DNA of 64,000 nucleotides from Dendrobates tinctorius (Eukaryota): assembly GCF_039654945.1 (NCBI RefSeq), contig NW_027361788.1, positions 28,520,001-28,584,000 on the forward strand, in the 5' to 3' direction. The translations under genes and the position numbers were made by a program. The notes below the pieces were generated by a model that was not told where the DNA came from, did no database searches, and worked only from the letters and a program-made list of their open reading frames with translations. The stretch's first letter is position 1. Every line of letters starts with the position of its first letter. Positions 4,709 to 42,445 of this stretch are shown piece after piece.

Positions 4709-4858
4709 CTCATCTCCTTCATCCACCAAAGCCTGAAAAGCACAAAAAAGAGCGCCATAGGCACCGACAGACACCATCACGTTAGTGATAGGATTCAGTT
4801 CCTGTTCAAACAGAGGTCCAAACATCTGGGCGAGGGCCTTCACCAAAGGAGGGTGTCC
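4709..4858 (-). CDS. KYAT1: Kynurenine aminotransferase 1 / glutamine transaminase K, coding exon (150 bp)
   Basis: GHPPLVKALAQMFGPLFEQELNPITNVMVSVGAYGALFCAFQALVDEGDE, with ctgcag| acceptor and |gtatta donor. The gene continues beyond the left window edge. Confidence 0.95.
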
Positions 4859-5162: not shown

Positions 5163-5313
5163 AAAGGCTCTGGTGTACTGGTTCAGTAAAGTGCCCTCAT
5201 CTTTGATGGCTTTGGAAAACGCTTCTCTCACATAACTCGGAGGCGAAAAATCGGGGAAGCCTTGTCCCAGGTTCACGGTTTTATACTTATCTGCGAGGCT
5301 GACGAACTCCACC
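5163..5313 (-). CDS. KYAT1: KYAT1 coding exon (151 bp)
   Basis: (W)VEFVSLADKYKTVNLGQGFPDFSPPSYVREAFSKAIKDEGTLLNQYTRAF contains the NLGQGFPDF motif of class-I aminotransferases. ttgcag| and |gtgagt; phases match the neighbouring exons. Confidence 0.95.
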
Positions 5314-6289
5314 CTGCAAGAGACATATCAGGGTAAAGTCATGAGAAGCCATGGGCGCAGCTCAGATCTTTGACAATCACAAACCTCCCCTGGCATTCCC
5401 TTTCCCCGGCTATAGGGGTTATACAATGGCGGGACAGGCCTTTAGGCAACAATACATAGATTTCACACAGTGCCCCATCACATGTTTTTTTCATCTCCTG
5501 CCATTTCCCTCTGTTCTTCACTAAAGAGAAGTGTTCATCAAACACTGGCACCTTAGGTAACCACCTATATTGCCTGCACCTCATCCCAACCCTAGTTTTA
5601 CGAACATTTTCTTGTAATTGGCCAGGTTTAACTTCAAAGTCCAATCCTCCTGGTAATTAAGCATCTACCAGAGGTATCTGGCAGCGTATTCCCCTTCTCC
5701 ATTTAAACACAAGTACGCTCGGCTGGATCAAGTGTGCACGTGTGTGAAGTTGTTGGGAAAAATGACAGGTGCTGCTTAAAGGGGCTCTCCAGGAATTACT
5801 GTATATATTGATAATTTCATCATTGAATACAGCTGATTAGTGGGGGTGACAGATGGAGGACCCCTCACTGGTCTGATTTTGATTACCCAGCCAAAAGATC
5901 AATCACTGATCTACAAATCCTGGACAACTCCTATAAGTCTATTTTAACCAGTGTGAGGTCAGCAAAGTCAGACTATAATACTCTAACATTAATGGCAGAG
6001 CTATGAAGTGAAACTTGTCTACGACTGGACAACCCCTTATAAATGGCCCCAGAACGCTGCATAATTAAATAAAAAAACCCTTATAGTTACATCCTGGACC
6101 AGCGCTGCGCCTCTGCTTTCAGCCATGTGCCCCTTGTTAGTCTCCTGGCACAAACAATGTCACAAGACCGCTGCAGCCAATTAAGACACTGATCGTCTGC
6201 AGCCTTCAAAATTTTGGCAGAGTGGACAATCAGTGTTTTTTTCTTCTCGTGACGGATGCAGTGGTCACATGCCAATGTGTCCGACTCAC

Positions 6290-6342
6290 CAGATATTTTC
6301 ATCCACTCCCTCCAGTCTCCGGGCGTGGATCCGTTTTGCCAT
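6290..6342 (-). CDS. KYAT1: KYAT1 first canonical coding exon (exon 6290-6348, ATG at 6342)
   Basis: MAKRIHARRLEGVDENIW resembles the mammalian KYAT1 N-terminus. atacag|GACAAGATG acceptor and |gtgagt donor. Synteny with LRRC8A and PHYHD1 favours KYAT1 over KYAT3. Confidence 0.92.
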
Positions 6343-9300
6343 CTTGTCCTGTATTTGGGTGGTAAAAGCATAGAGTAGTGAGAAGCAGGTCTGGATCCCC
6401 CTACTTTGTAAAGTACAGTGATCAGATGATCGACCCCCCCACCCTTTCCATACAGAACCGGGCAGAAAAAGCAGACGCTGGACTTTGGACCTTGCGACAG
6501 CTAAAGAATGTGAGTGCATTCTAGCGGAGAGGATGAGTGTAAGATGTGTGCACCAGAGTGTGCAGCACTGTGCCTGCTTGAATGGAGCTGTACATTAACG
6601 GACACAGGAGATTATGAAATGATGAACTATGTGACCTCCAGCTCTGACCCGGAGGGCAAAGAATTCTGTAGAAGGGTTAATTAATAACATGGTAGATTAC
6701 AAAACAGCTGTTATACACGCTGCTAATCATTTCATACTAGATGGAAAGTCATTGTGTGGACCGATGTTTCTGGTGTGTAATGGCAATTCAGTGGCAAACT
6801 GCAGCATCCATGCATTGTTCACCAAAAGTTGGTAAAAAGTCTTAAAAAAAGGATTTTGGTACTCACCGTAAAATTTCTTTGCTTGGAGCCTTCATTGGGG
6901 GACACAGGTAACCATGTGTGTATGCTGATGACACTAGACAAAGTGATTTTACGGTCAGTGCCAAAAATCCTTTTTTATTCTTTCATTGGAGTACACAGTT
7001 AACAATGGTATGTCCTAAATCAGTCCCAAGGGAGAGAACAGACTGTAGTGTTCATATCAGATTGGACAAAGGGCAACCATCGCTTGCAACACTTTACTAC
7101 CTAGGTCGGTATCAGCCGAGGAGTAGGTATGTAGCCTAAATAAACTTGCTAAAGAATGAAGAGATGACAAGGAAGTGGCCTGGCAAACCCGGACTGGAGA
7201 GGCCTGGTGGCAAACAGCCCAGGAGGCCCCCACTGCATGGGAGAAATGAGCTTATGGTCTATACTTAACTCGATAAGCCTCCAGTATAGTCGAACTGATC
7301 CAGCAGGTGATAGACTTGGAGGCAGGTAGTCCCTTACAACAATCCACAGGAATGACAAACAAGGCATCCGAACGCCTGAAGGATGTGGTCCTTGAGAAGA
7401 AGAGCATCCAGCTTGTGGAGATAGTTTTCAAGAGGATGGGCAAAAGGAAGGAAGGACAATATCCTCATTGAGGTGAAAAAGGGAGACTACCTTAGGAAGG
7501 AATGAAGAAACTGGTCGCAAGACCACCTTGTTCTGTTGAAAGACAAGGAAAGGAGAAAAGCAAGAGAGCTGCTTATTCGGAGACCCATCTAATAGAAGTG
7601 ATTGCAACTAAAAAGGCTACCTTCCAGGGGAGAAGAAGCAATGTCCTGTATGGGGATTGAAGGGGGATCCCTGAAGAATGTTCAAGACTAAGCTAAGGTC
7701 AAACGGGTCCATAGGGGGACGATATGGTGGCGCTACGCGGTCAACATCCTGAATGAAGGTCTTGACCTGGGGACGAGAGGCCAAATTCCGCTGAAACAGG
7801 ATTGAGAACGTGGATACCTGACCCTTGAAAGTATTAAGGGACAAACTGGACTCCAGCCCTGATTGTAAGAACACCAGGATGAAAGGAATGGAAAAAGACA
7901 TGAGTGCTGTGTAACTATCCTCACACCAGTGAAAGAGAGCCTTCCAGGTCCAGTGATAAATGCTTGAGGATGAAGGTTTCATTGCCCTGATCATGGTCTG
8001 TATGACCTAGGATGAGAAACCTGTCTCCTTCAGGACTACGGCCTCATCGGCCATGCCAATAAATTGAGAGACCAAAAATTCTGGTTGAATAGGGGATGCT
8101 GAGAGAGTAGGTCTGGTCAGTCTGAAAGTTTTCAAGGTATATCCACGAGTAGGTTGATTAATTCTGTGTACCAGGCTCTTCTGTGCCAGTCTGGGGGCAA
8201 CTAGGATGACTGGAACTCCCTCCTCCTTGATTTTCTTGATAAGTCAGGGGATCAGAGGAAGAGGTGGAAAAAAGTATGGAAGTCAAAACGGAGACCAGGA
8301 ATTGAATGGGGCATCATGACTGACTGCCAGAGGGTTGCAAGACCTGGCCATGAAACAAGGGACCTTGTGATTCATCAGAGGCGACATCAGAATGACAGTG
8401 GGAGTGCCCCACCTTTGACAGATCTGATCGAACACAGATGGGTTGATGGACCACTCGTCCGATGGGAGACCCTGACGGCTTAGGAAGTGGACCGCCCAGT
8501 TGTCCATGCCTGGAATATGCACAGCTGATATTGCTGGCACGTGCCGCTTGTCCCAAGTTACAATCTGTGAGACGTCTGACATGGGGGACTTGTTGCGTGG
8601 CCCGCCCTGGTCGTTTATGTATGCACAGTTGTGGCATTGTCGGATTGAATGTGAACTGGTCGGTCCAGTAGAAGGTCCTGCCAGTGGAGAAGAGAGAGGT
8701 AGATAGCTCTGATCTCCAAATGGTTGATGGGAAGGGAGGATTCCTGAGCGTTCCAATGACCTTGGTCTGTGTGATGAAGGAAGACCAACTACCATCCAAG
8801 AGACTGGCATCCGTCGTGACAACTTGCCAGTGAACAGGAAGGAATAATCTCCCCTGCCAAACGGAGGGGAGAGATTCCACCATGCCAGAGACTACCTCAC
8901 TAGAAAAGGCAGAAGTAGGGGTGATCCAGAGAGGAGATCCTTTTGTCCCAAGCTAACAGGAGGTCCAGCTGTAGGGGCTGGGTATGGAATTGTGCGAAAG
9001 GGACAGCTTCCATTGCAGTAATCACCTTCCCTAGAACTCTCCTTTAGAGTGGAATAGAGCGTGAGGATGAGTGACTTAGAGCATGAAACCCCAGGCTGAG
9101 TGCAGAAATCTTTTCCTTTGGAAGAAGGACTTTTGCGTGAGCGGTATAGAACAGTATGCCAAAAAAAACTAGGCGCTGGGCAGGGACCAGAGACAATTTT
9201 GCTGTGTTGACGACCCATCCTAGATGGGAAGGAGTGTCGAGGGTGACCTGAAGACTTTCTGAACAGTCTCAGAAAAATGGACCCTTGATCAGGAGGTCGT

Positions 9301-13698: not shown

Positions 13699-15416
13699 TA
13701 TTTTGGGAACACGGTGAGAAGTTACACCCTGTTACCCTGAAGACAAGAATCTTAAAAACAAAGCAAAAAGATTCTTAACACACAAACAAGGTGACCTAAG
13801 AAAAAAAGATGGATCTGGTATCAGATCAAGGTCTGCCTCCTACTGACCCCAAACCAAAATTGACATGATTTATGTCAGCCGGTGGGTGTACCCTGCATAG
13901 GAGACGATAAATCTTTTTTTCACCAATTGTCAGCCTTCTAGAGACAGAAGCTAAACTAAATTAAATGAAGCCTCTATAATTATTGGCCATCAACACTATT
14001 AGTCCAATTTCCAAAAATTACAATCATTTTGGTTGGTTTTCACATGTGCTGCCATCTAGTGGCCATTAAAAGGTCTCATTTTACAGCTTGCTGTGAAACT
14101 GATTGTTTGTGCCCCACATAGATATCTATTTTTTCCCTTTTCCATAGAATAAGGGATAACGCTGTTCTTTCTAGGGGTTTTACCACTAGGATCCCAAAAA
14201 GATCCCGATTCCGAGAAGTAGGCTATCCAGAATCACAGAGCTTCTCGACTTATGCTTGGTTCATTTGGAGCATCTGCCAGAAATAGCAGAGCACTGTACT
14301 CTGCTTTCTCTGCCAGTTCCATAGACAATGAATGGAGCGGAGGTCCAGCATCTCAGAATTCAGAGCCTTGTTCTTAGGATCAATAGGAGTCCTAATGCTG
14401 AGCTATGAATAGGAGATAACTTTATAATCTAGAAACAACTCTTCAAGCTTGTCATACACACTAGATCGGCTAATTGTCCCTTGGGCCTTTATCTATTTTT
14501 TTCAAACCCTCCTATGCACGTTTATGTCTGATTAGGTTGAATTCAGAAGTCCGTATGGTTCATAAATAGACAACAAATGCCTAAGAGGCTGTTAGTTCAG
14601 GCAGGTCAGACCTATGGCTGGTTTGCGCTTTACGATGAAACACGGATGTCTGAATCCAGCCTTAAAGGGGTTTTCTGGTTCCTGGAAAACCCCTGACCAC
14701 AACTGCAGTTTTTTTTTTTACTCACCCTTTCAGGGTCCAGTGCTGAGTCGACAGCGCATCTCTCTGGGTCTGTTATTGCCTGCAGCCTTGACATCATGTT
14801 GACAACGTTGCAGCCAATGAATTACTGAACTGAGCAGCTCTGCCCAGGTTGATGCCACGAGCTGCTGAGCTCAATGATTTTCTGCAGTCGTTGATCTGAC
14901 ATCAATAATAGACACAGGGAGTAGCTGCAGAGATTCAGCATTGGACACCGGAAGGGTGATTTTATTTTTTTTTTAAACAAACTGCATCTGTGGGAGGGGT
15001 CTTCTGAAACCAGAAAACCCCTTTAAGAATAGAGGAGTAAGTGTCTGCTGGACCCATATGGGGCTAGTTTGTGTCCTTTGAGAAAAAAGAACAGGATCAG
15101 GCAAGTTGAAATCCAACATGTCTGACCCTTCTTTCTCTGGACCTTGAACAGACATGACAATTCAATACACATTAAATGGTCATCGGGACTAGGCATGACC
15201 ATCCTCATCTGCATAGGGCTGCTGATATCACTGCCTAAGGTTTAGATACCAGAAATCTGCTGTCATTGCGCATTATGGTATTCATTAATTATCTCCTTAA
15301 AGGGGTTGTCCAGACTTGGGATTCAAGTTGGAGTCACTCTCTGCACAGTCAGGATTCTTCGGTGCTAAGATCAAGCTGTCATATGACTACAAGTATGCGA
15401 TTTGCATACTTCCAGC

Positions 15417-16942
15417 CAGGCCCGGATTGGTAATATACCGAACCGGGCAGATTCCCGGTGGGCCGGTGGCTCTGAACTAGGAAATGGGCCGCCGGCCCTT
15501 TAAAACCTTTGACTAGGCTCTGTGTGCGCGCTCCCTCTCATCGCATGCGCTGACAAGGGCCGCATCTGCCGGCGTCAGTGCGTGAGCGTGCCCCACGTCC
15601 GTGACTGTGCGCCGCTGCTGCCCTCCTCAGTGCAGGCAAGCGGGAGAGCTCGCGCCGCACACTGGACCTTGTCAGAAGTTTGAAAAGGCCGCCGCAGCAG
15701 CACGCACAGGACTCCTGCCTCTCTGTCTGATGCTGGAAAGTACCAGCATCAGAGAACAGTGGAGAGAGCCAGCAGCACGCAGGATTAAAGGTAGTACCTG
15801 CCTGTGAGTGCTGTGCTTCCAGGGAGAGCTAGGGAAGCAGCTCAAGCCAGCAAGGTGACATCGTCTTCTGCTCTGATCTGCATCGGGGGAGGTGAGGGGA
15901 CAGAGCTGCTGTGAGCACTAGAACCTGAGGAGCTGCATATGGACATCAGCCTCCTCTGCACCACAGAAGAGAGAGTGTGTGTAAGTAATACTTGTGTGTG
16001 GTATCTGTAGTATGTAAGTGTGTAATGCTTGTCTGTGCGGTATCTGTAGTGTGTGTGTGTGTGCGGTATCTGGTGTGTGTGTGTGTGCGCGGTATCTGTA
16101 GTGTGTGTGTGTGCGCGGTATCTGTAGTGTGTGTGTGTGCGCGGTATCTGTAGAGTGTGTGTGTGTGCGCGGTATCTGTAGAGTGTGTGTGTGTGTGCGC
16201 GGTATCTGTAGAGTGTGTGTGTGCGCGGTATCTGTAGTGTGTGTGTGTGCGCGGTATCTGTAGTGTGTGTGTGTGCGCGGTATCTGTAGTGTGTGTGCGG
16301 TATCTGTAGTGTGTGTGTGTGTGTGTGGTATCTGTAGTGTGTGTGTGTGTGCGCGGTATCTGTAGTGTGTGTGTGTGCGCAGTATCTGTAGTGTGTGTGT
16401 GGTATCTGTAGTGTGTGTGTGTGTGTGTGGTATCTGTAGTGTGTGTGTGTGTGTGTGTGTGGTATCTGTAGTGTGTGTGTGTGCGCGGTATCTGTAGTGT
16501 GTGTGTGTGCGGTATCTAGTGTGTGTGTGTGTGCGGTATCTGTAGTGTGTGTGTGTGCGGTATCTGTAGTGTGTGTGGGGTATCTGTAGTGTGTGTGTGC
16601 GGTATCTGTAGTGTGTGTGTGCTGTAGCTGTAGTGTGTGTGTGTGCGGTATCTGTAGTGTGTGTGTGCTGTAGCTGTAGTGTGTGTGTGTGCGTGGTATC
16701 TGTAGTATGTAAGTGTGTAATGCTTGTCTGTGCGGTATCTGTAGTGTGTGTGTGTGTGCGCGGTATCTGTAGTGTGTGTGTGTGTGTGCGCGGTATCTGT
16801 AGTGTGTGTGTGTGTGTGTGCTGTAGCTGTAGTGTGTGTGTGCGCGGTATCTGTAGTGTGTGTGTAGTGAGGACATTCATTGTATGTGGGCTGGTGAATT
16901 TTTTTCGTGCCAGGGCTGCTTTTTGGTCCCAGTCCGGCCCTG
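15417..16942. mobile_element. Non-autonomous hAT element carrying a minisatellite
   Basis: TIR CAGGCCCGGATTGG / CCAGTCCGGCCCTG. Perfect 8-bp TSD CTTCCAGC at 15409-15416 and 16943-16950. Confidence 0.9.
15975..16866 (+). repeat. (GT)n-GCGGTATCTGTA compound mini/microsatellite
   Basis: Dozens of GGTATCTGTA cores separated by variable (GT)n tracts. This explains the HT-rich pseudo-ORFs. Confidence 0.95.
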
Positions 16943-18542
16943 CTTCCAGCCACATTTAGACTAGACGTGTCCGGCCTCGCTCAATTTGCTTGTAGTGAGC
17001 AAGACTGTGCACGTCTAGTTGGCAAGTGACAGCCAAAATATTTGAAGCCCTTTTAAACTCTGCCAAAAGATAAACATCTCTGAATTTGAGTCTATTTTTA
17101 ATGAATTTAGGGGAAAACGCACCACAAAAAAAATACAAAATTATACATTTGGGCCAATTTCTGTAAACTTTTTAATGAATTTGGTGAAAAAAAAATGAAG
17201 ACAAAGCAAAAAATTTAAAAAGCCGGAAACACAATGGTGCCTATATATCTGCTAAATTTTCGCCACACCACATTGCCTCATGTGAATATACCTTTATGTA
17301 TTCAATGAACCTGCAGTGATATAAATAGATGCCATCCAAAAGGAGAACTTTGTCTCTGCATTACCTCAAAATACCCCCCCCCCCAAAATAAAATGCATAA
17401 CATTCTAAAAAATGTACTAGGCCTCATTAATCAAAGTTGCCATCTTTGTTGCCTCTAGCAACCAATCATAGCTCAGCTTTCATTTTTCTAGAACAGGTTA
17501 AGAAATGAAAGCTGAACTCTGTTTGGTTGCTATGGGCAACAATGACCGATTTTCTTGTAGACGGTTTTGATAAATGAGACTTGGGGGTGGTAAATGTTCT
17601 CACAATTCACAACATCTGTCAATATCTGAAGCTGGGGTTACGATTACATGCGTGAGAATTTCCCATGTCACTGATAGGCATATTAATAACATGGCCGCTT
17701 GCAACACGTGTACAGGATGTGTCCTAAATTTCCTCAGGGCTTTGTCCCTCCAGAGACATTTATTCGGCATTATTTCCACAGAACTAAGTAAAAGGCTAAA
17801 AGTGGAATATTGTAAACAAAGTCCAACGTGACATAATGGAGAGGAGCTGCGCATGAGTTGTCGCCATTACTACAGGCACCATCCCCATGGCATTACATTA
17901 TTATTTTTTTTTTACTGGTGTACTAGAAAATTGCTCATAGGGCAATTCCCTAATATACTATATTTACTTAAAAATAAATAATCTAACCATTCTGCCCCAA
18001 TGTCATCAGTGGTTTCCATCTGTGGGTCCATTAATACCATCAGTGCTTTTCCAGTATGGATAAAGAAAGAAATTACAAAGCATCTCCTATACTTTTCAAT
18101 GTTAAACACAAGTTCGCTGTATGCATTTCTCATGGACCTATAGACTTGTATTGGCCCTTGTCATCCGTGCTACCAGAAAAAAAAACGACATGTCTCCATT
18201 TATTTTGCACGGACACGCGGTCCATATAGATAGCACCATAGGTTATAATAGGTATGTGTGGCATTCGTGAAAAAATTGAATACCACAAGTCCTGGAAACA
18301 CGGACATGTGAACGAGGCCTAAACAGGTACAGCAAATCCATAAAAAGTCCACATCACCAAGATATTTCTAGCATCAAGTTCCACTACACCAAGAGGAAGT
18401 GCACGTGACACCAGAAATGCGTTAGTGGTATGGATTTTTGATGAATTTTCTGTACCGGTTTTAAAAATTTTGAAATAAAGCATTAAAGAAATTTTAATAT
18501 ACATCGTCAAACCGGACTATTCTTCCTTTGGATAGTCTCATG

Positions 18543-18716
18543 CAGGGGCGGACACAGACGGAAGAGGGCCCCTGTGAAAGAACAATATATGGGTTCTTCT
18601 TTTGCAGTTCAAAAACATGTCTGCTGCAGTAGCTGCCTTATAGGTGGTAGTGGCCCCCTTCCTTCTTGGACCCCTGTGCAGATGCACAGATTGCAACAAG
18701 GGTATGTCCGCCCCTG
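18543..18716. mobile_element. Small hAT-like MITE
   Basis: TIR CAGGGGCGGACA / TGTCCGCCCCTG. No clean TSD. Confidence 0.6.
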
Positions 18717-19239
18717 TTCACACATCCATGATTCAAATGGATATCATGCAGATGCCATCTGTGTGTCGTCCATTCACCCCACGGATCAACTTATTGACAT
18801 ACGTCTGTCTGATTAAACCTGCACAGAATAATTTGGTCTAGAAGAATAAAAGAAAGCCATTGGGGTGCTCAGCTGCAAATCCACTAAGCAGAGAATGGAG
18901 CAATGCTGCCCCCCCGACTCTGCTGAACGCTTACATCTGACTGGTAACAGTGAACCGGTGGGGTGGTTACTGGGTGTCAGACCGACCCCTTATCTGATAT
19001 TTATGGGTTCTCAATGTAGCACACCTGGAACTTTAACTGTGGACTATAATTCCTGCAAAACAATGTGGACATGTGCTTTAAAGACTGCCATGATGAGCAC
19101 ATAATGACTATCTCCATGGAAGCATTTACATAAGCGCGCACACTCTCTATTATCCCACAGATGTGCTCATTACTGCCAGCTTACATGGAGATTAGCGGAG
19201 ATTTGCCCTATTAAACATTGCTTAGTAAGATATACTCAC

Positions 19240-19332
19240 ATGAATAGAGCTGGCAGCGGTGCCGCAGAGTCGCTTACACCATTGTGCAGTAGTCCCCATG
19301 TATCCAACCACTCTGCCTCTGAATGGGACCAT
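19240..19332 (-). CDS. KYAT1: Putative alternative KYAT1 upstream coding exon (exon 19240-19335) encoding an N-terminal leader
   Basis: Polypyrimidine-tag| acceptor and |gtgagt donor. ATG at 19332 opens 31 codons (MVPFRGRVVGYMGTTAQWCKRLCGTAASSIH), in frame with GAC AAG ATG of the next exon. Confidence 0.65.
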
Positions 19333-20198
19333 CACCTACAGCATGAGGTGGAGAGGCTGAAGATACATGATCATGTACAGTACATCTTTCTGCTAATGGG
19401 AATCTAGTAATCTACATGCGAAAACTAAACGCATGCCTCTGCCGCTCCCATCTGTCCCAGTCACCTGCATGGCCTACTACAGCAAGCCATCCGGAGGTGC
19501 CAGGTAGGGAACATACTGATGTGAACAGTTAATATGCGTTTATTATAGTATGAAACTCATTTCCAATCTACATAGAGCCATTACAGCTTCCTCTATGGAG
19601 GTCACCCTGCTGTCCTGATCTCCATAACAGATAATGGGCTTCACAAATCACAATGCAGCTGTATAGCACAGCTTGCACCTGATGTAGGACATACATACAC
19701 GTCCTTTTAGAAGGGGTTTAGACAGATCCTATATTAGTCTATAGATGATGGATATGACTGTTTTGTCTACGTCAGGAGCTTTTCTGGTCCATATGTTAAA
19801 TGGAAACAATAACTGGGCTTTACTACAGTCAGGCTATCCCCACTCGTTACGGATGGGCTTTAAAGGGTTATTTCAAGACTAGGATATTGATGACCTATCC
19901 TTAGGACAAGTCAGAAATATCAGATCGGTGGGAGTCGGACACCTGACTCCTTCACCGATCAGCTGTAGCAGTTTTCCGCAGCCTCTGCAAGTAAGCAGTA
20001 ACCGAAACACCACAGCGCCACACGCAGTGTAGTGACCGCTCTCATGAACTGCAGGTCAGCTCCAATGCCTAAGTAGCACTGTCACTATATGAATCACTCA
20101 ACTAGAGGAATGGTGAAATCACAAAGTAAAGATGGGAAACTATTTTTCCCTAAAATGAGAAAATTTGGATACCTGAATGACAGCACGTGGAGGCCTTA

Positions 20199-20519
20199 GG
20201 GTATGTGCACTGCACACGCTGCGGATCTGCAGCAGTTTCTGCTGCGGTGTACAGTAGCATTATAACCTATGAAAAATGAAAACCGCTGTGCAGACGGTGT
20301 GGATTTTTCCGCGTGGTTTTGCTGCGGTTTTCAATCCGCAGAAAGAAATGACATGTCAATTCTTTCTGCGGAATCCGCAGCGGTTTTCCATTTCCTCCAT
20401 TGTAGAGGTGATAAACCGCAGGGCAAAACCGCAGGCAAATCCGCAGGTCTTCTGACTTACGGATTTACCTGCGGATTTTACTAAATCCGCAGAGCATTCC
20501 GCAGCGTGTGCACACACCC
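20199..20519. mobile_element. Harbinger/Tourist-like MITE (GGGTATGTGCAC.. family; relatives at ~24778-25457, 25461-26600, 27836-28040, 31628-31980, 38370-38640, 60980-61290)
   Basis: TIR GGGTATGTGCAC / GTGCACACACCC, TTA TSD, internal CCGCAG/TGCGG repeats. Confidence 0.88.
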
Positions 20520-21149
20520 TTAGACCCTACACTATGCGGCCATGGACATACTGTACTGCCACATGGTGGAACACATGTACGTTTCATAGGGGCCTATGAT
20601 GTACTCAGCGCCTCTGTATAATGAGGCATAGGAGAACACATGGCACAATCTTTTGTTCTATATGGCTCTGTATGAAACTGGAGGTAGGCAGGGCTACAGG
20701 GTGACCCCCAAAGACACCTAAGGCCATTGCCCTACAACTCACAGGTAGTGCACCGCTATAATACGAGCATCCAGCACTAGTACCATGTTATACCCACGTG
20801 CCTCAATTTCCAGCACCACTGTCGGAGTCTAGCCTAGTATGATTTGCAGTGCATGATGGGATATTTGTGCAATTGAAGTCACATGACCCTGTTCTAGAGT
20901 AGAGGTCAATACTGCCTTGTTGTCACAGTAATAAAAAAAATGATTTCCATAAAAGTACAACTTTTATGCGATAGAAAAGCTGCAAGCTACTTTTGGTGAC
21001 CACAATGACACCCAATGCATTCCTATGGAAAAAAAAACATGTAGACATCCCAAAGTCACCATACAAGCCAGGCCTGTTCTAGCAGCCATGCCAAGTGTGC
21101 CCTGATCACCCCTAAGCACCACACAGAGGCTGGGAATACATACACATAC

Positions 21150-21445
21150 CCAGCAACCAACGTCAACTCAGCTCAGTCTCTGTCATGGAGTCCTCGTGCC
21201 CGCGACAAAGATGGCGGTTGCGCCCTCTCAGGCCCCGCCCCTCTGATCTGTTTGTCCCAGGAACATTGGATCCTCCCTCTCAGTGCAGGATACCGGTTCC
21301 CTGACCCAACCCTCGGGATACCGGCGGCCCCGAACCCCGGGACATAGCGTCACTTCCGGGGGTGGTGGAGATGTGGAGCACTGCGGAGGCGAGGGACAAA
21401 GCGGAAAGTAGGAGACGAGGGACCGGCCGCATCCCGGGGCGTCAG
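21150..21445. promoter_or_regulatory. Bidirectional GC-rich promoter shared by KYAT1 (-) and LRRC8A (+), including probable non-coding first exons
   Basis: CpG-rich segment with YY1-like AAGATGGCGG (21208-21217), GC box (21231-21240) and ETS-CRE composite GCGTCACTTCCGG (21347-21359). Divergent splice donors: GTATGT on - (21144-21149) and CAG|GTAGGA on + (21446). Confidence 0.75.
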
Positions 21446-21589
21446 GTAGGACTAGTAGGGAAAGAACCGGGTGTTACCGGTGGTGAGCAGCGTACCATGT
21501 GGGAATGTGGTGGGGGGGACGGAGAGAAAGGTGCGGGCTGCAAAGGCAGTAGGGACTCCTGTCCGATGTCACAGTCTGCAGGGCTGAGT

Positions 21590-23760
21590 GTGCGGTGTAT
21601 TATGTGTATATAGACTGGATCCGTCTGTGTATACTATATATACTGTATCCATCTGTATATACTGTATATTATATATACTGTATCCAGCTGTGTACTGTAT
21701 ATATGGTATATACTGTGTAATCTGTATCCACTATATACTATATCATATATACTGTATCCATCTGTGTATTGTGTATATACGGTATATAGTGTATCCATCT
21801 GTGTACTGTATACTCTGTTCTATATACTGTATCCATCTGTAATCAACTGTATATACTGTATCCAGCTGTAATCAACTGTATATACTGTATCCACTATATA
21901 CTATATTATATATACTGTATCCATCTGTGTATACTGTATAGTCTATATACACTCTATCCATCTGTGTATATAGACTGGATCTGTCTGTGTATACTGTATT
22001 TACTATATATACTGTATCCATCTGTATATACTGTATCCAGCTGTGTACTGTATATACAGTATATATGGTATATACTGTGTCATCTGTATCCATCTGTATA
22101 TACTGTATCCACTATATACTGTATTATATATATACTGTATCCATCTGTGTATATAGACTGGATCTGTCTGTGTATACTGTATTTACTATATATACTGTAT
22201 CCATCTGTATATACTGTATCCAGCTGTGTACTGTATATACAGTATATATGGTATATACTGTCATCTGTATATACTGTATCCACTATATACTGTATTATAT
22301 ATATACTGTATCCATCTGTGTATTGTGTATATACGGTATATAGTGTATCCATCTGTGTACTGTATACTCTGTTCTATATACTGTATCCATCTGTAATCAA
22401 CTGTATATACTGTATCCAGCTGTAATCAACTGTATATACTGTATCCACTATATACTATATTATATATACTGTATCCATCTGTGTATACTGTATAGTCTAT
22501 ATACACTCTATCCATCTGTGTATATAGACTGGATCTGTCTGTGTATACTGTATTTACTATATATACTGTATCCATCTGTATATACTGTATCCAGCTGTGT
22601 ACTGTATATACAGTATATATGGTATATACTGTGTCATCTGTATCCATCTGTATATACTGTATCCACTATATACTGTATCCATCTGTGTATATAGACTGGA
22701 TCTGTCTGTGTATACTGTATTTACTATATATACTGTATCCATCTGTATATACTGTATCCAGCTGTGTACTGTATATACAGTATATATGGTATATACTGTC
22801 ATCTGTATATACTGTATCCACTATATACTGTATTATATATATACTGTATCCATCTGTGTATTGTGTATATACGGTATATAGTGTATCCATCTGTGTACTG
22901 TATCCATCTGTAATCAACTGTATATACTGTATCCATCTGTGTATACTGTATAGTCTATATACACTATCCATCTGTGTATATAGACTGGATCTGTCTGTGT
23001 ATACTGTATTTACTATATATACTGTATCCATCTGTATATACTGTATCCAGCTGTGTACTGTATATATGGTATATACTGTATCCAGCTGTGTACTGTATAT
23101 ATGGTATATACTGTGTCATCTGTATCCATCTGTATATACTGTATCCACTATATACTGTATTATATATATACTGTATCCATCTGTGTATTGTGTATATACG
23201 GTATATAGTGTATCCATCTGTGTACTGTATCCATCTGTAATCAACTGTATATACTGTATCCATCTGTGTATACTCAATTATACTGTGTCCATCTGTATAT
23301 ACTGTATATTATATATACACTCTATCCATCTCTGTATACTGTATAGTCTATATACTGTATCCATCTCTGTATACTGTATAGTCTATATACTGTATCCCAT
23401 CAGTGTATACTGTATAGTCTATATACTGTATCCATCTGTGTATACTGTATACTCAATTATACTGTGTCCATCTGTATATACTGTATATTATATATACACT
23501 CTATCCATCTCTGTATACTGTATAGTCTATATACTGTATCCATCTCTGTATACTGTATAGTCTATATACTGTATCCATCTCTGTATACTGTATAGTCTAT
23601 ATACTGTATCCCATCTGTGTATACTGTATAGTCTATATACTGTATCCATCTGTGTATACTGTATAGTCTATATACTGTATCCATCTGTGTATACTGTATA
23701 GTCTATATACTGTATCCATCTGTGTATACTGTATAGTCTATATACTGTATCCATCTGTGT
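21590..23760 (+). repeat. AT-rich TATACTGTATCCATCTG satellite with higher-order units, decaying to ~24280
   Basis: Directly visible short units. Identical translations at 21872-22093 and 22426-22647 show a 554-bp higher-order duplication. Confidence 0.95.
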
Positions 23761-32982: not shown

Positions 32983-35683
32983 CTCATAGCCTCTGGAAAA
33001 CACCCCACTTGTAGGCGGACGACTGCTATTCTTTCATCAGGTCTGGCTGCCTATTACAGAAGACAGGTGGGTCAAGGAAATAGTGTCTTCAGGATACAAG
33101 ATCGAGTTTACTACCATCCCACCGAACAGGTTCTTTCTCTCCGTTCCTCCAAAACCTCCACTCAAGGCTCGAGCCTTCCATCAAGCGGTTTCTTCCCTCC
33201 TTCAAGCAGGAGTTATAGTACCAGTTCCAGCAGACGAGCGCTTCCAAGGGTTCTACTCCAATCTGTTCGTGGTGCCCAAGAAGGGAGGCAGCGTCCGACC
33301 CATACTAGACCTCAAGCAACTCAACAAGTATGTTCGAGTTCGTCACTTTCGCATGGTGTCCCTCCGGTCAATCATCGCGTCCATGGAGAAAGGAGAATAT
33401 CTCGCCTCCATAGACATACAGGACGCATACCTGCATATACCAATTGCTGCCGCCCATCAGAGATTCCTTAGATTCGCAATCAACCAAGACCATTACCAGT
33501 TTGTGGCCCTCCCGTTCGGACTCGCCACGGCTCCCAGAACATTTACAAAGGACATGGCAGCTACCATGGACGTTCTACACTCCAGAGGCATATTAGTCGT
33601 TCCATACCTGGACGACCTTCTCATCAAGGCCCCCACCTTCAAGGACTGCACTGCGAGGTCAACGTCTCAATCACAATCGACACTCTGAGTCGCCTGGGAT
33701 GGTTAGTCAATTTACAGAAGTCATCGACTACCCCGAGTCAGTCTCTGGCCTTCCTAGGGATGCTATTCGACACCTCCAGGGGTCTGGTGATCCTCCCCAG
33801 GGACAAGGCACTAGCCCTCCATTTGGGAGTTCGCACTCTCCTCCGCAAGTCCCCCCGATCTCTCCGGTATGCCATGAGAGTACTCGGCAGGATGGCAGCA
33901 GCAATGGAGGCGGTACCATTTGCCCAGTTTCACCTCAGACCCCTTCAACTGGCCATCTTCAAGTCCTGGAATCCGTTCTCCCTCGACAGGGAGTTCCGGT
34001 TATCATCGAAAACCAGGAGGTCCCTGCACTGGTGGCTCAAGCCAACCTCACTTGCAAGGAGAAAATCCTCTCTTAGGTCAATGGAAGGTTTTGACCACCG
34101 ACGCAAGCCTGACTGGTTGGGGCGCGGTGCACCTACATCACAGAGCGCAAGGCAAGTGGTCACCAACGGAAGCGAACATGCCCATCAACATCTTGGAAAT
34201 TCGGGCCATCTTCCTGGCATTGAAAGCCTTCCATCACTTGCTAGCAGACTCTCATATCAGAGTACAGTCGGACAATGCCATGGCGGTGGCGTATGTGAAC
34301 CATCAAGGCGGGACCCGCAGAATCCAGGCGATGAACGAAGTAACACGTATCCTACACTGGGCGGAGGATGCGAGGTCGGTACTCTCTGCGGTCCACATTC
34401 CGGGTGTGGACAGCTGGGAAGTCGACTATCTCAGCAGACAAGGAATGGACTCGGGGGAGTGGTCTCTCCATCCCGAAATTTTTCGTCGGATCTGCCATCG
34501 CTGGGGGACCCCGGATGTGGATCTAATGGCATCCCATCTCAATGCCAAGGTTCCCAATTTCATGGCCAGGACGCGCGATCCGTGGTCGCTCGGAGCAGAT
34601 GCCCTGGTTCAGGACTGGACCCAGTTCCAGCTTCTGTACATTTTTCCACCCCTCCCCCTGATCTCCAGAGTCCTGAGGAAGATCAAACAAGAGGGAGTTC
34701 TGTTGTGAGTTCATTTTCCCCTCCGTCACTGAGGCCTGGTGAACTCCCTATTCTAGTGAAGGAAGGTAGTGAGCCTGATTATCAGGCACCTGGGACTAAT
34801 GAAGACGATTGGCTGAGTGGAGTCTCTGACTGGATTTAAGGCAGCCTACGCCCTTTCTGCCCTGCGGGTGATTTCTCCGTGGACTCTTGGACACCAGTCT
34901 GATTCCTGCTCTCCTAAAGCTAAGTTTTCTGTTTTGCCTTTTTGCATCTAAGATTTGTTTTTGTTTTTCTTGCTTTTTGGATTCTGCCACTCCCTGCTGG
35001 AGTGTGCAGTGTTCCTTGAGCTCTGTCTTCTGAAAGTACCTGAGTGCTGATTTAGTTTTTGAAGCTTAGTTGCTTCAGGGCCATTTTTATATCAGCTTGC
35101 TGGCTTTTGGCTCTGATAGGGTTTTGGCAGATTGCAGACAGCAGCCTTCCTATCCGTTCCTATCTAGGTAGTTTTTGGGCCCCGTCTTTGCTCAGCCTGT
35201 CTTTCTGTCTGTGTAAGTGTTTTCATCTTGCTTCACCGTCATTATATGTGGGGGGCTGCCTATTGCTTTGGGGTCTGCTCTGGGGCAGTTAGATTCCCCC
35301 TTTCCTTCTTTAGGCCTATGTATCTCTCCGGCTGTGATCGAGGGGTCTAGGTCATCGTAGGAACCCCCCCCACGGCTACTGCTAGTTGTGTTGATAGGTT
35401 CAGGGGTCTGTAATCTGATAGTTGCCAACTTCTCTGGTTTTCAGGACTTAGCTAGCATTTCTGTTTTTGCCTCCTACGGTGACTCAATCATAACAGAGTT
35501 CCCACCGTCCTGATCGCGCCAGACAGGCCCAGGTGTACATGGTACGCCGACGTCGTGCAACTCACAGCAGACGCCCCCTGGCGTCACCCCACACGTCCCG
35601 AACTTCTGTCACAAGGCCCGTTCTTCCACCAGAACTCAGGGGCTCTCAATTTGACGGCGTGGCCATTGAGACCTGGGTTTTGA
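32980..35683 (+). pseudogene. DIRS RT-RNaseH-methyltransferase-like ORF (frameshifted, split by solo LTR)
   Basis: FYSNLFVVPKK..RPILDLK, LPFGLATAPRTFTK, YLDDLLI; TTDASLTGWG..HINILE-like..SDN; DLMAS..YIFPP..LIAP..W. Frameshifts near 33660 and 34070. Confidence 0.9.
34701..35495. mobile_element. Solo LTR (795 bp) inserted in DIRS
   Basis: TGTTGTGA...TCATAACA termini, 6-bp TSD GAGTTC at 34695-34700 and 35496-35501. Confidence 0.88.
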
Positions 35684-36699
35684 CCCAAGCAGGTTTTTCA
35701 CCGGACATCGTTAAAACCATGATCAGGGCTCGAAAGCCAGCTTCAGCCAGGATTTACTATCATACCTGGAAGGTTTTCTTTACATGGTGCGAATCTCACG
35801 GACTGATCCCACTTCCCTACTCTCTTCCAAAGGTCCTCGGTTTCCTTCAGTCAGGCTTGGACGCCAGGCTATCCCTGGGCTCGCTTAAGAGCCAGGAGTC
35901 AGCGCTTTCATTGCTCCTTCAGAGGCGTATTGCTAACAAGCCGCAAGAGAGGACTTTTCTCCAAGGGGTTTCCCAATTGGTTCCCCCCTACAAACATCCA
36001 TTGGAGACATGGGACCTCAACATGGTCCTGACAGCATTGCAGACACCTTTCGAACCCCTTAAGGAGGTCTCACTCTGCCTTCTATCACAGAAGGTGGTTT
36101 TTCTGGTGGCAATCACCTCGCTACGCAGGGTGTCCGAACTTTCAGCACTTTCCTGCAGACAACCCTTCCTAGTTTTCCATCAGGACAAAGTGGTTCTCCG
36201 TACAGTCCCATCATTCCTTCCGAAGGTTGTGTCCAGCTTCCACCTCAATGAGGAAATCTCACTACCATCTCTTTGCCCGGTTCCCGTTCATAGAGTGGAG
36301 AAGGCTCTGCATACGCTTGACCTTGTCAGGGCATTGCGTATTTACGTATCTAGGACTGCTTCCTTCCGGAAGTCTGATTCACTTTTCCTTCTTCCAGAAG
36401 GCGTTCGCAAGGGCCTACCGGCTTCCAAAGCCACCCTTGCTAGGTGGATCAAATCCACCATTCAAGAGGCTTACCGCCTTAACAATTCTCCTCTTCCGGC
36501 CAGTATCACGGCACACTCTACGCGGGCGGTAGGGGCCTCTTGGGCCATTCGGCATCAAGCCTCGGCACAACAAGTGTGTAAGGCAGCCACTTGGACTAGC
36601 CTCCACACATTTACAAAACACTACAGAGTGCATACCCAGTCCTCAGCGGATGCGAGCCTGGGTAGACGGGTCCTGCAGGCGGCAGTACCCCAAATCTAG
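35533..36699 (+). CDS. DIRS tyrosine recombinase domain ORF (open)
   Basis: 388-aa open frame with R-H-R-Y tetrad motifs LRRVSEL, HSTR and FTKHY. Confidence 0.9.
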   Translation: MYMVRRRRATHSRRPLASPHTSRTSVTRPVLPPELRGSQFDGVAIETWVLTQAGFSPDIVKTMIRARKPASARIYYHTWKVFFTWCESHGLIPLPYSLPKVLGFLQSGLDARLSLGSLKSQESALSLLLQRRIANKPQERTFLQGVSQLVPPYKHPLETWDLNMVLTALQTPFEPLKEVSLCLLSQKVVFLVAITSLRRVSELSALSCRQPFLVFHQDKVVLRTVPSFLPKVVSSFHLNEEISLPSLCPVPVHRVEKALHTLDLVRALRIYVSRTASFRKSDSLFLLPEGVRKGLPASKATLARWIKSTIQEAYRLNNSPLPASITAHSTRAVGASWAIRHQASAQQVCKAATWTSLHTFTKHYRVHTQSSADASLGRRVLQAAVPQI

Positions 36700-40294: not shown

Positions 40295-42445
40295 ATGATC
40301 CCTGTAACAGAGCTGCGGTATTTTGCTGACACGCAACCGGCTTATCGCATCTTGAAACCATGGTGGGATGTCTTCACGGACTACATCTCAATCGTCATGC
40401 TGATGATAGCGGTGTTTGGGGGAACCCTGCAGGTCACACAGGATAAGATGATCTGCCTGCCTTGTAAATGGGTCACCCATGACAGCTGTAATGATTCATA
40501 CCGTGCCTGGACAACTCCAGAACCAGAGTACACCAATAGTAGTCTGGTGCCACCTCCTGATCTCGGCCCGACTGGCATCAAATACGACTTGGATAGACAT
40601 CAGTATAACTACGTTGATGCCGTTTGCTATGAAAATCGTCTGCACTGGTTCGCCAAGTACTTTCCTTACCTCGTATTACTGCACACGTTGATCTTCTTAG
40701 CCTGTAGTAATTTCTGGTTTAAGTTTCCCCGCACCAGCTCCAAGTTGGAGCATTTTGTATCCATCCTTCTCAAATGCTTTGATTCACCATGGACAACTCG
40801 AGCTTTGTCTGAAACCGTGGTGGAAGAAAGCGATACTAAGCCGGCCGGAGGCAAGATGAACGGCTCGGTGGACAAGAAGTCTTCTACAGCAAGCGAAGAT
40901 GTGGAAGCCACCGTGCCCATGCTTCAAAGGAGTAAATCCAGGGTGGAACAGGGGATTGTTGACAGAACTGAAACCGGCGTCTTGGATAAAAAGGAGGGTG
41001 AGCAGGCCAAAGCCTTATTCGAAAAGGTGAAGAAGTTCAGAACTCATGTAGAAGAAGGTGATATAGTATACAGGCTTTATATGCGGCAGACAATCATCAA
41101 AGTCATCAAGTTTATTCTGATCCTTTGCTACACTGTGTATTACGTTAGCAGCATTACTTTCGATGTGGACTGCAAGGTGGACATTGAAAGCCTAACCGGC
41201 TATCGAATGTATCGTTGTGCTCATCCACTGGCAACCCTGTTCAAAATCTTAGCCTCTTTCTACATCAGTCTGGTGGGCTTTTATGGACTGGTCTGCGTCT
41301 ACACACTCTGGTGGATGCTGAGGCGGTCCTTAAAAAAATATTCCTTCGAGTCCATCCGAGAAGAGAGCAGCTACAGCGATATCCCGGATGTGAAGAATGA
41401 CTTTGCGTTCATGCTGCATCTCATCGACCAGTACGATCCACTCTACTCGAAGCGCTTTGCCGTCTTTTTGTCGGAAGTCAGCGAGAATAAGCTGAGACAG
41501 CTGAACCTCAATCATGAGTGGACATTGGATAAACTACGGCAAAGGATCACCAAGAACTCCCAAGACAAGCTGGAGCTGCACCTTTTCATGTTGAGCGGTA
41601 TCCCCGACACAGTGTTTGACCTTGTTGAGTTGGAAGTTTTGAAACTAGAACTTATACCAGATGTCACCATCCCTCCTAGCATCGCCCAGCTACTGGGGTT
41701 AAAGGAGCTCTGGCTGTATCACACAGCTGCTAAAATTGAGGCGCCAGCTTTAGCCTTCCTCCGAGAGAACCTAAAGTCACTGCATATCAAATTTACTGAC
41801 ATCAAGGAGATTCCTTTATGGATCTATAGCTTGAAAAACTTGGAGGAGCTGCACCTGACTGGTAACCTGAGCTCCGAGAACAACCGATATATCGTCATCG
41901 ATGGTCTACGAGAGTTGAAGAGGTTGAAAGTGTTGAGGCTGAAGAGTAACCTGACTAAATTACCCCAAGTCGTGACCGATGTGGGCGTCCACCTGCAGAA
42001 GCTCTCTGTCAACAATGAGGGCACCAAGCTGATGGTCCTCAACAGTCTCAAAAAGATGGTGAACCTTGCAGAACTGGAGTTGGTGCGTTGTGATTTGGAG
42101 AGAATTCCTCACTCCATTTTTAGTCTTCACAACCTTCAGGAAATCGATCTGAAGGATAATAATTTGAAGACCATCGAGGAGATTATCAGCTTCCAGCACC
42201 TGCACAGACTGACCTGCCTTAAGCTCTGGTATAACCATATCGCCTACATCCCCATTCAGATTGGCAATCTGGCATGCCTCGAGCGCTTGTACCTCAACCG
42301 CAACAAGATAGACAAAATACCAATTCAGCTGTGCTTGTGCAGAAAGCTTCGTCATCTTGACCTGAGCCACAACTCCCTAACAAGTATCCCATCGGAGATT
42401 GGGCAACTTCAGAACTTGCAGTATTTTGCCGTAACTGCCAACCAT
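40295..42445 (+). CDS. LRRC8A: Volume-regulated anion channel subunit LRRC8A (SWELL1), large coding exon (717 codons; exon starts 40288)
   Basis: MIPVTELRYFADTQPAYRILKPWWDVFTDY N-terminus, four TM segments, LRR array. tttccag| acceptor and CAT|gtgagt donor. Confidence 0.99.

What the first reader, a model, noticed from the sequence alone, without database searches (positions are those of the whole stretch)
19240..19335. Hidden KYAT1 exon encoding a candidate mitochondrial presequence
Seen: a 96-bp minus-strand exon with a good acceptor (cttcagcctctccacctcatgctgtag) and donor (gtgagt), 13 kb upstream of the canonical ATG. Its ATG opens 31 codons that join in frame, via GAC AAG, to MAKRIH... 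The peptide MVPFRGRVVGYMGTTAQWCKRLCGTAASSIH has 4 Arg/Lys, many Ser/Thr/Gly and no Asp/Glu. Known: rodent KAT1/glutamine transaminase K has cytosolic and mitochondrial forms made by alternative 5' exons. Inference: inclusion or skipping of this exon switches frog KYAT1 between mitochondrion and cytosol. It is too short to appear in the ORF track.
Basis: partly seen in the sequence, partly recalled or inferred. Interest (0 to 1): 0.72.

Follow-up and report, generated by a model that had tools for sequence, protein, structure and literature searches.

The report
Frog KYAT1 mitochondrial-leader cassette exon
The 96-base stretch is a real, conserved alternative exon of the poison-frog KYAT1 gene that adds a 33-residue, presequence-like N-terminus, but it is the frog counterpart of a leader exon known from rat since 1995 and already annotated in other frogs, so it is ordinary.

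Summary
Window 19335..19240 (minus strand) is a 96-nt exon-like unit with an AG acceptor, a GTGAGT donor and an ATG that opens 31 codons. These join in frame, through GAC AAG, to the canonical KYAT1 start. The window is Dendrobates tinctorius. Assembled RNA contigs of a related dendrobatid show this exon spliced to exon 2 and preceded by exon-1 sequence. Contigs of a closer relative skip it. RefSeq models of Ranitomeya variabilis, Hyla sarda, Dendropsophus, Rana, Lithobates, Aquarana, Mantella and Hyperolius carry the homologous leader. In five frog genomes the frame is open in this phase only, exon indels are 3 or 6 nt, and the splice flanks are conserved. Cuckoo and puma KYAT1 have the same layout: a separate leader exon ending in phase 0, six bases before the canonical ATG. 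Papers citing Malherbe 1995 report that the rat 32-residue leader targets mitochondria. Import itself stays inferred, because dN/dS is about 1 and no predictor or experiment was available. Novelty is low. In passing: a third, frog-specific, conserved N-terminal form is read from the sequence directly upstream of exon 2.

The parts
19240..19335 (-). Cassette exon of KYAT1 (96 nt) encoding the 31-residue leader peptide quoted in the finding (MVPFRGRVVGYM...AASSIH).
   Evidence: Sequence. RNA contig of a related dendrobatid lies on 19251..19335 and continues into exon 2. Orthologous exons in four other frog genomes.
19330..19332 (-). Start codon of the extended form, in context gtgATGg (G at -3, G at +4).
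   Evidence: Conserved in Ranitomeya and Hyla. Dendropsophus and Rana instead use an in-frame ATG 9 nt further upstream.
19234..19239 (-). Donor site GTGAGT of the cassette exon.
   Evidence: GTGAGT or GTAAGT in all five frogs. Junction ...CAT|GACAAGATGGCAAAACGGA seen in an RNA contig of run X3.
19336..19362 (-). Acceptor region. It holds the AG at 19337-19336 that gives exon start 19335, and an upstream CAG at 19359-19357 that would give exon start 19356.
   Evidence: The RefSeq model of Ranitomeya variabilis X1 (MTESD-V-MVPF) requires the AG|GTG acceptor. Rana and Dendropsophus start translation upstream of it, so they must use an earlier acceptor.
19170..19239 (-). Conserved intronic flank downstream of the exon.
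   Evidence: 55 of 69 bases identical to Hyla and 52 of 69 to Dendropsophus. Identity falls to about 45% further out.
21144..21241 (-). KYAT1 non-coding exon 1. The 5' end is approximate. The donor is most likely 21144|21143. It contains a 7-codon uORF at 21186..21163.
   Evidence: contigs of 1672 nt (X1) and 677 nt (X2) lie on 21143..21200 and 21143..21241 and then leave the stretch. Sequence.
6290..6348 (-). KYAT1 exon 2, reading GAC AAG then the canonical ATG (MAKRIHARRLEGVDENIW).
   Evidence: Identical to D. tinctorius RefSeq KYAT1.
6349..6519 (-). ORF contiguous with exon 2 (57 codons beginning MHSHSLAVARSKVQRLLFLPGS). This is a third N-terminal form, RefSeq isoform X1.
5163..5313 (-). 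KYAT1 exon 3.
   Evidence: Human KAT1 chain 3fvs_A matches with E 1.4e-11.
4709..4858 (-). KYAT1 exon 4.
   Evidence: Pfam Aminotran_1_2.
21293..21445 (+). First exon of the divergently transcribed LRRC8-type neighbour gene.
   Evidence: a 3876-nt contig of run X5 with no mismatches ends on 21293..21447, and a G|GT donor sits at 21445/21446. The LRRC8 coding exon lies at 40295-42481.

Best explanation
Window 19335..19240 (minus strand) is a genuine alternatively used cassette exon of Dendrobates tinctorius KYAT1 (kynurenine aminotransferase 1 / glutamine transaminase K). It lies between non-coding exon 1 and the exon that carries the canonical ATG.

When the exon is included, scanning ribosomes meet its ATG first, in a strong context. 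Translation then runs 31 codons, crosses the junction in phase 0, reads GAC AAG and continues into MAKRIH. The enzyme gains 33 extra N-terminal residues. When the exon is skipped, translation starts at the canonical ATG.

The exon is the positional orthologue of the amniote KYAT1 leader exon. In rat that exon encodes a 32-residue mitochondrial targeting sequence. The frog extension is net positive, carries no acidic residue in the exon-encoded part, and is rich in Ser, Thr, Ala and Gly. It most likely acts as a mitochondrial presequence, so exon choice divides the enzyme between cytosol and mitochondria.

Shown: the exon, its splicing in relatives, its conservation, its open frame and its shared architecture. 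Inferred: translation from this ATG in vivo, import, and cleavage.
For: - Sequence anatomy.
- Inclusion (run X3, a dendrobatid about 8% diverged): a 124-nt contig lies on 19251..19335. Its loose end, reverse-complemented, reads ACTGCAATCAT|GACAAGATGGCAAAACGGA. That is an exon end of the same length and frame, followed by the start of exon 2. A second loose end places exon-1 sequence directly before the exon.
- Skipping (runs X1 and X2, about 3% diverged): long contigs leave exon 1 and have no piece on the exon.
- Species: window exons are 100% identical to D. tinctorius RefSeq KYAT1.
- Annotated homologous leaders: Ranitomeya variabilis X1 (identical over the first 13 residues), Hyla sarda X2 (first 9 residues identical), Dendropsophus X2, Rana temporaria X1, Lithobates, Aquarana, Mantella and Hyperolius. 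Transcript-derived Logan ORFs (P0292 on 38 contigs, P0295) carry the ranid leader.
- Five-genome DNA alignment. The frame is open in the claimed phase in all five, and the other two phases have stops in all five. Exon indels are 3 and 6 nt, against 1, 3, 5, 12 and 17 nt in the flanks. The window exon is 77% identical to Hyla, against about 42% in the distant flank. About 40 nt upstream and 70 nt downstream of the exon are conserved among the four hyloid frogs (Dendrobates, Ranitomeya, Hyla, Dendropsophus); against Rana the upstream 40 nt are 26 of 40 identical and the downstream flank is no better than background (24 of 68). Every lineage keeps one in-frame ATG, although its position shifts.
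- Architecture: cuckoo and puma KYAT1 have a separate leader exon (28 and 32 codons). It ends in phase 0 at a GT donor, and the next exon starts two codons before the canonical ATG, exactly as here.
- Literature: rat GTK/KAT1 has a 32-residue mitochondrial targeting sequence whose presence is set by alternative splicing (PMC10452834, PMC9671947). Human KAT III exon 2 encodes a 33-residue, alternatively spliced leader (PMC11354673).
- Composition: the frog leader has net charge +4 and no acidic residue in the first 20 residues. The puma leader has net charge +5.
Against: - No spliced RNA evidence comes from D. tinctorius itself. The only same-species contig at the exon (run X5, 19319..19500, depth 2.8) is unspliced.
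- The run types are guesses, and contig depth cannot quantify inclusion.
- In the X3 relative, three differences in the first 30 nt of the exon were not displayed, so its ATG is unverified.
- Pairwise dN/dS in the exon is about 1 (range 0.6-2.6). The peptide sequence as such is not under clear purifying selection. Conservation is at nucleotide level and extends into the introns, which would also fit a splicing or UTR-regulatory role.
- The hydrophobic moment is no better than in shuffles. The composition 'no Asp/Glu and at least 4 Lys/Arg' occurs in 6% of random stop-free 31-codon windows of this DNA.
- Similarity to mammalian leaders is not significant (p 0.4-0.5). Among frogs it is significant only for Mantella (p 0.005) and Hyperolius (p 0.002) in shuffle tests.
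- Pelobates and Hymenochirus models have leaders that are not positively charged.
- A second presequence-like N-terminal form exists and could be the main mitochondrial form.
Confidence: 0.75

Rival explanations
1. The exon is real and conserved, but it acts at RNA level. Its inclusion changes the 5' leader of the mRNA (uORF content, translation efficiency, stability). The peptide it can encode has no targeting role.
For: dN/dS is about 1 in the exon, so synonymous and non-synonymous sites are equally conserved. Conservation extends into both intron flanks. The amphipathic moment is not above shuffles. The start codon position is not fixed across frogs.
Against: The frame is open only in the claimed phase in five genomes. 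Exon indels are all multiples of three. Each lineage retains an in-frame ATG. The exon architecture is identical to the amniote leader exon, whose rat version is reported as a targeting sequence (PMC10452834). Net positive charge is kept in all neobatrachian leaders.
Confidence: 0.15
2. In frogs the mitochondrial form is made mainly from the other extension. This is the 59-residue N-terminus read from the sequence directly upstream of exon 2 (6519..6349, from an internal start site or a retained intron end). The cassette-exon form would then be minor or have another destination.
For: That ORF is open in five frogs. Its indels are 3, 6 and 9 nt, against 1, 2, 5 and 19 nt upstream. Its dN/dS is 0.5-0.7, lower than for the cassette exon, and the other frames are closed. 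Its first 20 residues have 3 Lys/Arg, no acidic residue and a hydrophobic LLFL stretch. It is RefSeq isoform X1 in D. tinctorius, Dendropsophus, Pseudophryne and Hyperolius, and is also modelled in Engystomops and Pelobates. One Logan transcript ORF, P0293, carries it.
Against: It is absent in cuckoo and lacks an ATG in puma, so it is not the form known from rat. The two explanations do not exclude each other.
Confidence: 0.3
3. The unit is a chance pseudo-exon in a long intron.
For: With thresholds set after the fact, 8.5% of simulated introns contain such a unit. A second one exists at 15020..14726.
Against: Spliced contigs exist in a relative. Orthologous annotated exons occur in eight or more frog species. 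Conservation is exon-centred over distances at which the intron is unalignable.
Confidence: 0.01

Closest known systems
Rat KAT I / glutamine transaminase K mitochondrial leader (Malherbe et al. 1995, as cited in PMC10452834 and PMC9671947)
   Same: It is the same gene (KYAT1 orthologue). The N-terminal extension is 32-33 residues and is present or absent through alternative splicing. It is positively charged and poor in acidic residues. The exon layout seen in puma, a mammal, matches the frog: a separate exon ending in phase 0, two codons before the canonical ATG.
   Different: There is no significant sequence similarity between frog and mammalian leaders. Import has been tested only in rat. 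The rat genomic layout itself was not examined here; puma stood in for mammals.
RefSeq-modelled KYAT1 long isoforms of other frogs (Ranitomeya variabilis X1, Hyla sarda X2, Dendropsophus ebraccatus X2, Rana temporaria X1 and others)
   Same: The exon is orthologous. Ranitomeya matches over the first 13 residues and Hyla over the first 9. All share the GT[GA]AGT donor, and the four hyloid frogs share conserved flanks (against Rana only the upstream flank is weakly similar).
   Different: The start codon and the 5' exon edge differ between lineages. Ranitomeya's model starts in exon 1 (MTESD) because of a different exon-1 donor. Whether the D. tinctorius annotation carries this isoform could not be determined.
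Human KAT III (KYAT3) exon 2 leader (PMC11354673)
   Same: The paralogous enzyme has a 33-residue leader on an alternatively spliced exon 2, giving cytosolic and mitochondrial forms.
   Different: It is a different gene. The window gene is KYAT1, judged by its best match to KAT1 structures, identity to RefSeq KYAT1 and its LRRC8 neighbour.

Membership tests
KYAT1 (KAT I / GTK) mitochondrial-leader cassette exon | The host gene is the KYAT1 orthologue. | tested here: met
   Exon 3 matches human KAT1 chain 3fvs_A with E 1.4e-11. Exon 4 hits Pfam Aminotran_1_2. Three window pieces are 100% identical to D. tinctorius RefSeq KYAT1 X1. An LRRC8 gene lies head-to-head with it.
KYAT1 (KAT I / GTK) mitochondrial-leader cassette exon | A separate exon lies between non-coding exon 1 and the canonical-ATG exon. 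It has its own ATG and joins in phase 0 two codons before the canonical ATG. | tested here: met
   Window. The same layout is present in cuckoo (28 codons, then GCA AAA ATG) and puma (32 codons, then CTC ACC ATG).
KYAT1 (KAT I / GTK) mitochondrial-leader cassette exon | Both inclusion and skipping transcripts occur. | tested here: inconclusive
   Inclusion is seen in contigs of run X3 and skipping in contigs of runs X1 and X2, all from related dendrobatids. RefSeq gives X1 versus X3 in Ranitomeya variabilis. No spliced evidence comes from D. tinctorius itself.
KYAT1 (KAT I / GTK) mitochondrial-leader cassette exon | The extension is about 30-35 residues with presequence composition: net positive, few acidic residues, hydroxylated residues. 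| tested here: met
   The extension is 33 residues with 5 Lys/Arg and 1 Asp, which is encoded by exon 2. Net charge is +4, with no acidic residue in the first 20. Puma has net charge +5. This composition has a 6% background frequency.
KYAT1 (KAT I / GTK) mitochondrial-leader cassette exon | Sequence homology to the validated mammalian leader. | tested here: not met
   Local alignment against shuffles gives p 0.46 for Panthera and 0.39 for Lemmus. Orthology therefore rests on position and architecture only.
KYAT1 (KAT I / GTK) mitochondrial-leader cassette exon | The leader directs import into mitochondria and is cleaved. | not testable with these tools
   No targeting predictor was available offline and no experiment was possible. 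The claim is inferred from rat (PMC10452834).

The most novel reading that the evidence does not exclude
Frog KYAT1 makes three N-terminal forms rather than two: the cytosolic form, the 33-residue cassette-exon form shared with amniotes, and a frog-specific 59-residue form read from the conserved sequence directly upstream of exon 2. In this reading the two presequence-like leaders are used from different promoters or in different tissues, or send the enzyme to different destinations.
Probability: 0.3. Interest if true: 0.4.

Novelty: already known. Interest (0 to 1): 0.15.

Why it matters
It shows that the alternative leader exon of KYAT1 is conserved in layout from frogs to birds and mammals. 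This is the arrangement that, in rat, divides glutamine transaminase K / kynurenine aminotransferase I between cytosol and mitochondria. It also gives the exon's coordinates in the D. tinctorius genome. Beyond improving this species' annotation it changes little, because the mechanism is in the literature and the orthologous isoforms are already modelled in other frogs. The only mildly new point is the second, frog-specific conserved N-terminal extension next to exon 2.

Tried and rejected
- A word search with the typed 51-residue leader-plus-exon-2 peptide gave nothing. This is uninformative, because only proteins of 28-89 residues were eligible.
- The cluster listing was repeated to see whether D. 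tinctorius has an annotated isoform with this exon. It returned the same 15 of 38 members, so the question stays open.
- The coelacanth KYAT1 X1 locus was not on record.
- The hydrophobic-moment test of the leader was no better than shuffles, so I did not use amphipathicity as support.
- Pairwise similarity to bird, marsupial, eutherian and coelacanth leaders was not significant. I therefore dropped a claim of sequence homology with amniote leaders and rely on exon architecture instead.
- dN/dS gave no sign of peptide-level purifying selection. It is reported as evidence against, not explained away.
- The bacterial-type promoter and terminator scan of the promoter region was irrelevant.
- Han et al. 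2010 (PMC2867614) is not held.
- The chance pseudo-exon reading was considered and rejected.

Full report
**The observation.** On the minus strand, window 19335..19240 reads ctgtag|GTG ATG GTC ... TCT ATT CAT|gtgagt. A TAG lies in frame just upstream. Exon 2 of the gene begins cag|GAC AAG ATG GCA AAA CGG ATC CAC at 6348, so the two join in frame. The downstream exons at 5313..5163 and 4858..4709 match human kynurenine aminotransferase 1 structures (E 1.4e-11) and Pfam Aminotran_1_2.

**Could it be chance?** I scored all AG and GT sites of the 14.8-kb intron with rough splice-site weight matrices written from memory. The donor is among the best 4 of 759 GT sites, and the acceptor among the best 47 of 924 AG sites. 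Exon-like units of this quality that hold an ATG open to the donor in the right phase number 2 in the real intron. The other is at 15020..14726. First-order Markov simulations give 0.1 per intron, and 8.5% have at least one. 'No Asp/Glu and at least four Lys/Arg' occurs in 6% of stop-free 31-codon windows of this DNA, and the hydrophobic moment is not above shuffles. Sequence alone is thus only suggestive.

**RNA evidence.** The run search found five holders in four coded organisms. I laid four contig sets on 18400..21590.
- Run X3 (about 8% diverged) has a 124-nt contig on 19251..19335. Its loose end, reverse-complemented, reads ACTGCAATCAT|GACAAGATGGCAAAACGGA. This is an exon end of the same length and frame as here (AAC TGC AAT CAT instead of AGC TCT ATT CAT), joined directly to the start of exon 2.
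- Another X3 loose end puts exon-1-like sequence (TGTCGTTGGCTGCTG...) just before the exon. About 14 extra bases there suggest a slightly different acceptor in that species.
- In X1 and X2 (about 3% diverged), contigs of 1672 and 677 nt leave exon 1 at 21144/21143 and have no piece on the exon. That is the skipped form.
- X2 also has a low-depth unspliced contig across the exon. Its three exon differences are all non-synonymous (G14A, L23R, S29N).
- X5 has no differences from the window, so it is likely the same species. It holds only an unspliced contig, 19319..19500.

Inclusion and skipping are therefore both seen, but in relatives, not in the window's own species. Contig depth cannot measure the ratio. 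The run kinds are guesses, though the splice junctions show that the contigs derive from RNA.

**Species and gene.** The 77-residue ORF at 6519..6286 and exons 3 and 4 are 100% identical to RefSeq KYAT1 isoform X1 of Dendrobates tinctorius, and not to Phyllobates or Ranitomeya. An LRRC8 coding exon lies at 40295-42481 on the plus strand (Pannexin_like, E 5e-148). A first exon of that gene, at about 21293-21445, faces KYAT1 exon 1.

**Relatives.** A search with exon 3 as bait returned many N-terminal fragments. A profile search plus a cluster listing then gave full-length frog proteins. Their N-termini show the same leader:
- Ranitomeya variabilis X1: MTESDV-MVPFRGRVVGYMANTAQRCKRCCGTTASCNH-DK-MAKRIH
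- Hyla sarda X2: MVPFRGRVAGSLVTAHRQWPKGHSSTPANCAH-NR-MAKRIQ
- Dendropsophus X2: MLAVTGLFRSRVAGYMVTAHRQWCKGHCSTSAYCAH-EK-
- Rana, Lithobates, Aquarana: MLPLMARMRSRGAEYMVIAHRQLSDTSATASCIH-DR-
- Mantella and Hyperolius carry it as well.

Transcript-derived Logan ORFs carry the ranid leader (P0292 on 38 contigs, P0295). The exon is therefore already modelled in public annotation of other frogs.

**DNA-level comparison.** I fetched the loci of Hyla sarda, Rana temporaria, Dendropsophus ebraccatus and Ranitomeya variabilis and aligned the exon with its flanks.
- The claimed frame is open in all five species. The other two frames carry stops in all five.
- Exon indels are 3 and 6 nt, while flank indels are 1, 3, 5, 12 and 17 nt.
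- Identity of the window to Hyla is 77% in the exon, 78% in the 40 nt upstream and 80% in the 70 nt downstream. It is about 42-52% further out. This exon-centred island with conserved flanks holds among the four hyloid frogs and is typical of regulated cassette exons. Against Rana the exon is 66% identical, but the upstream 40 nt are 26 of 40 identical and the downstream 70 nt only 24 of 68, no better than the distant flank.
- The donor is GTGAGT or GTAAGT everywhere.
- The start codon moves. Dendrobatids and Hyla use the ATG at exon position 4. Dendropsophus and Rana use an ATG 9 nt upstream, which in dendrobatids is followed by TAG and lies before the AG used there.
A CAG 21 nt further upstream is invariant in five frogs and must be the acceptor in Rana and Dendropsophus. 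The 5' edge in D. tinctorius (19335 or 19356) is not settled. The coding result is the same either way.

**Against peptide-level constraint.** Pairwise dN/dS in the exon is about 1 (0.6 to 2.6). This fits a presequence, which is selected for composition rather than sequence, inside an alternative exon whose synonymous sites carry splicing signals. It would also fit an RNA-level role. The open frame, the frame-preserving indels and the retention of an in-frame ATG in every lineage argue for coding.

**Comparison with the known system.** In cuckoo and puma KYAT1 loci the leader is a separate exon of 28 and 32 codons ending at a GT donor in phase 0. The next exon starts two codons before the canonical ATG (GCA AAA ATG and CTC ACC ATG). 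The frog layout is identical (GAC AAG ATG). Reviews state that rat GTK/KAT I has a 32-residue N-terminal mitochondrial targeting sequence and that cytosolic and mitochondrial forms arise by alternative splicing (PMC10452834 and PMC9671947, citing Malherbe et al. 1995). They also state that human KAT III exon 2 encodes a 33-residue, alternatively spliced leader (PMC11354673). Sequence similarity of the frog leader to amniote leaders is not significant, so orthology rests on position, phase and length. Charge is comparable: frog +4, puma +5, with no acidic residue in the first 20 residues.

**Mechanism.** When the exon is included, its ATG (gtgATGg) precedes the canonical one in frame, giving a 33-residue extension that most likely serves as a mitochondrial presequence. 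When the exon is skipped, the cytosolic enzyme is made. I rate 'real coding cassette exon' at about 0.95 and 'functions as a mitochondrial presequence' at about 0.7. Import and cleavage are inferred only.

**Something beside the finding.** The 171 nt directly upstream of exon 2 (6519..6349) form an ORF that reads through the acceptor into exon 2. This is RefSeq isoform X1 in D. tinctorius and several other frogs.
- It is open in five frog genomes.
- Its indels are 3, 6 and 9 nt, against 1, 2, 5 and 19 nt upstream.
- Its dN/dS is 0.5-0.7, and the other frames are closed.
- It is missing in cuckoo and lacks an ATG in puma.
- Its N-terminus is also presequence-like.

**Verdict.** Novelty and interest are low.

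**Limits.** The read tools were used once each, as allowed.

Noticed in passing
window 6349-6519 (-): An ORF contiguous with KYAT1 exon 2 reads through its acceptor and adds 59 residues (beginning MHSHSLAVARSKVQRLLFLPGS). It is RefSeq isoform X1 of D. tinctorius. It is open in five frogs, has frame-preserving indels and dN/dS of 0.5-0.7, and is absent in cuckoo and puma. This is a third, presequence-like N-terminal form.
   Followed up: partly
window 21293-21445 (+) and 40295-42481 (+): The first exon of an LRRC8-type gene (donor G|GT at 21445/21446) faces KYAT1 exon 1, so the two genes share a promoter region. In run X3 a single contig runs through both first exons (21151..21447), which suggests overlapping divergent transcripts in that species.
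   Followed up: partly
window 21163-21186 (-): KYAT1 exon 1 holds a seven-codon uORF (ATG ACA GAG ... TGA). In Ranitomeya variabilis the same ATG is followed at once by a GTGAGC donor, and RefSeq uses it as the start codon of isoforms X1 and X3 (MTESD).
   Followed up: partly
window 20219-20539: A short inverted-repeat (MITE-like) element in the intron. It is covered at summed k-mer depths of hundreds to thousands by many diverged contigs in all three dendrobatid contig sets, so it is a high-copy transcribed repeat.
   Followed up: no
window 16030-16865 and 21603-22978: Two tandem arrays. The first has a 26-nt GT-rich unit of about 33 copies in KYAT1 intron 1. The second is a complex AT-rich array just beyond the shared promoter.
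   Followed up: no
window 57828-58847 (+): An intact 339-residue Tc1/mariner-type transposase ORF (Pfam HTH_Tnp_Tc3_2 at 1e-20, DDE_3 at 5e-17, Sleeping Beauty HTH).
   Followed up: no
window 35533-36699 (+): A 388-residue ORF with a weak Phage_integrase hit below the Pfam cut-off (E 8e-4). It may be a tyrosine-recombinase retroelement or Crypton remnant in a GC-rich block.
   Followed up: no
window 14726-15020 (-): The only other unit in KYAT1 intron 1 that passes the same splice-site and in-frame ATG thresholds (295 nt, 24 open codons). There is no evidence that it is used.
   Followed up: no
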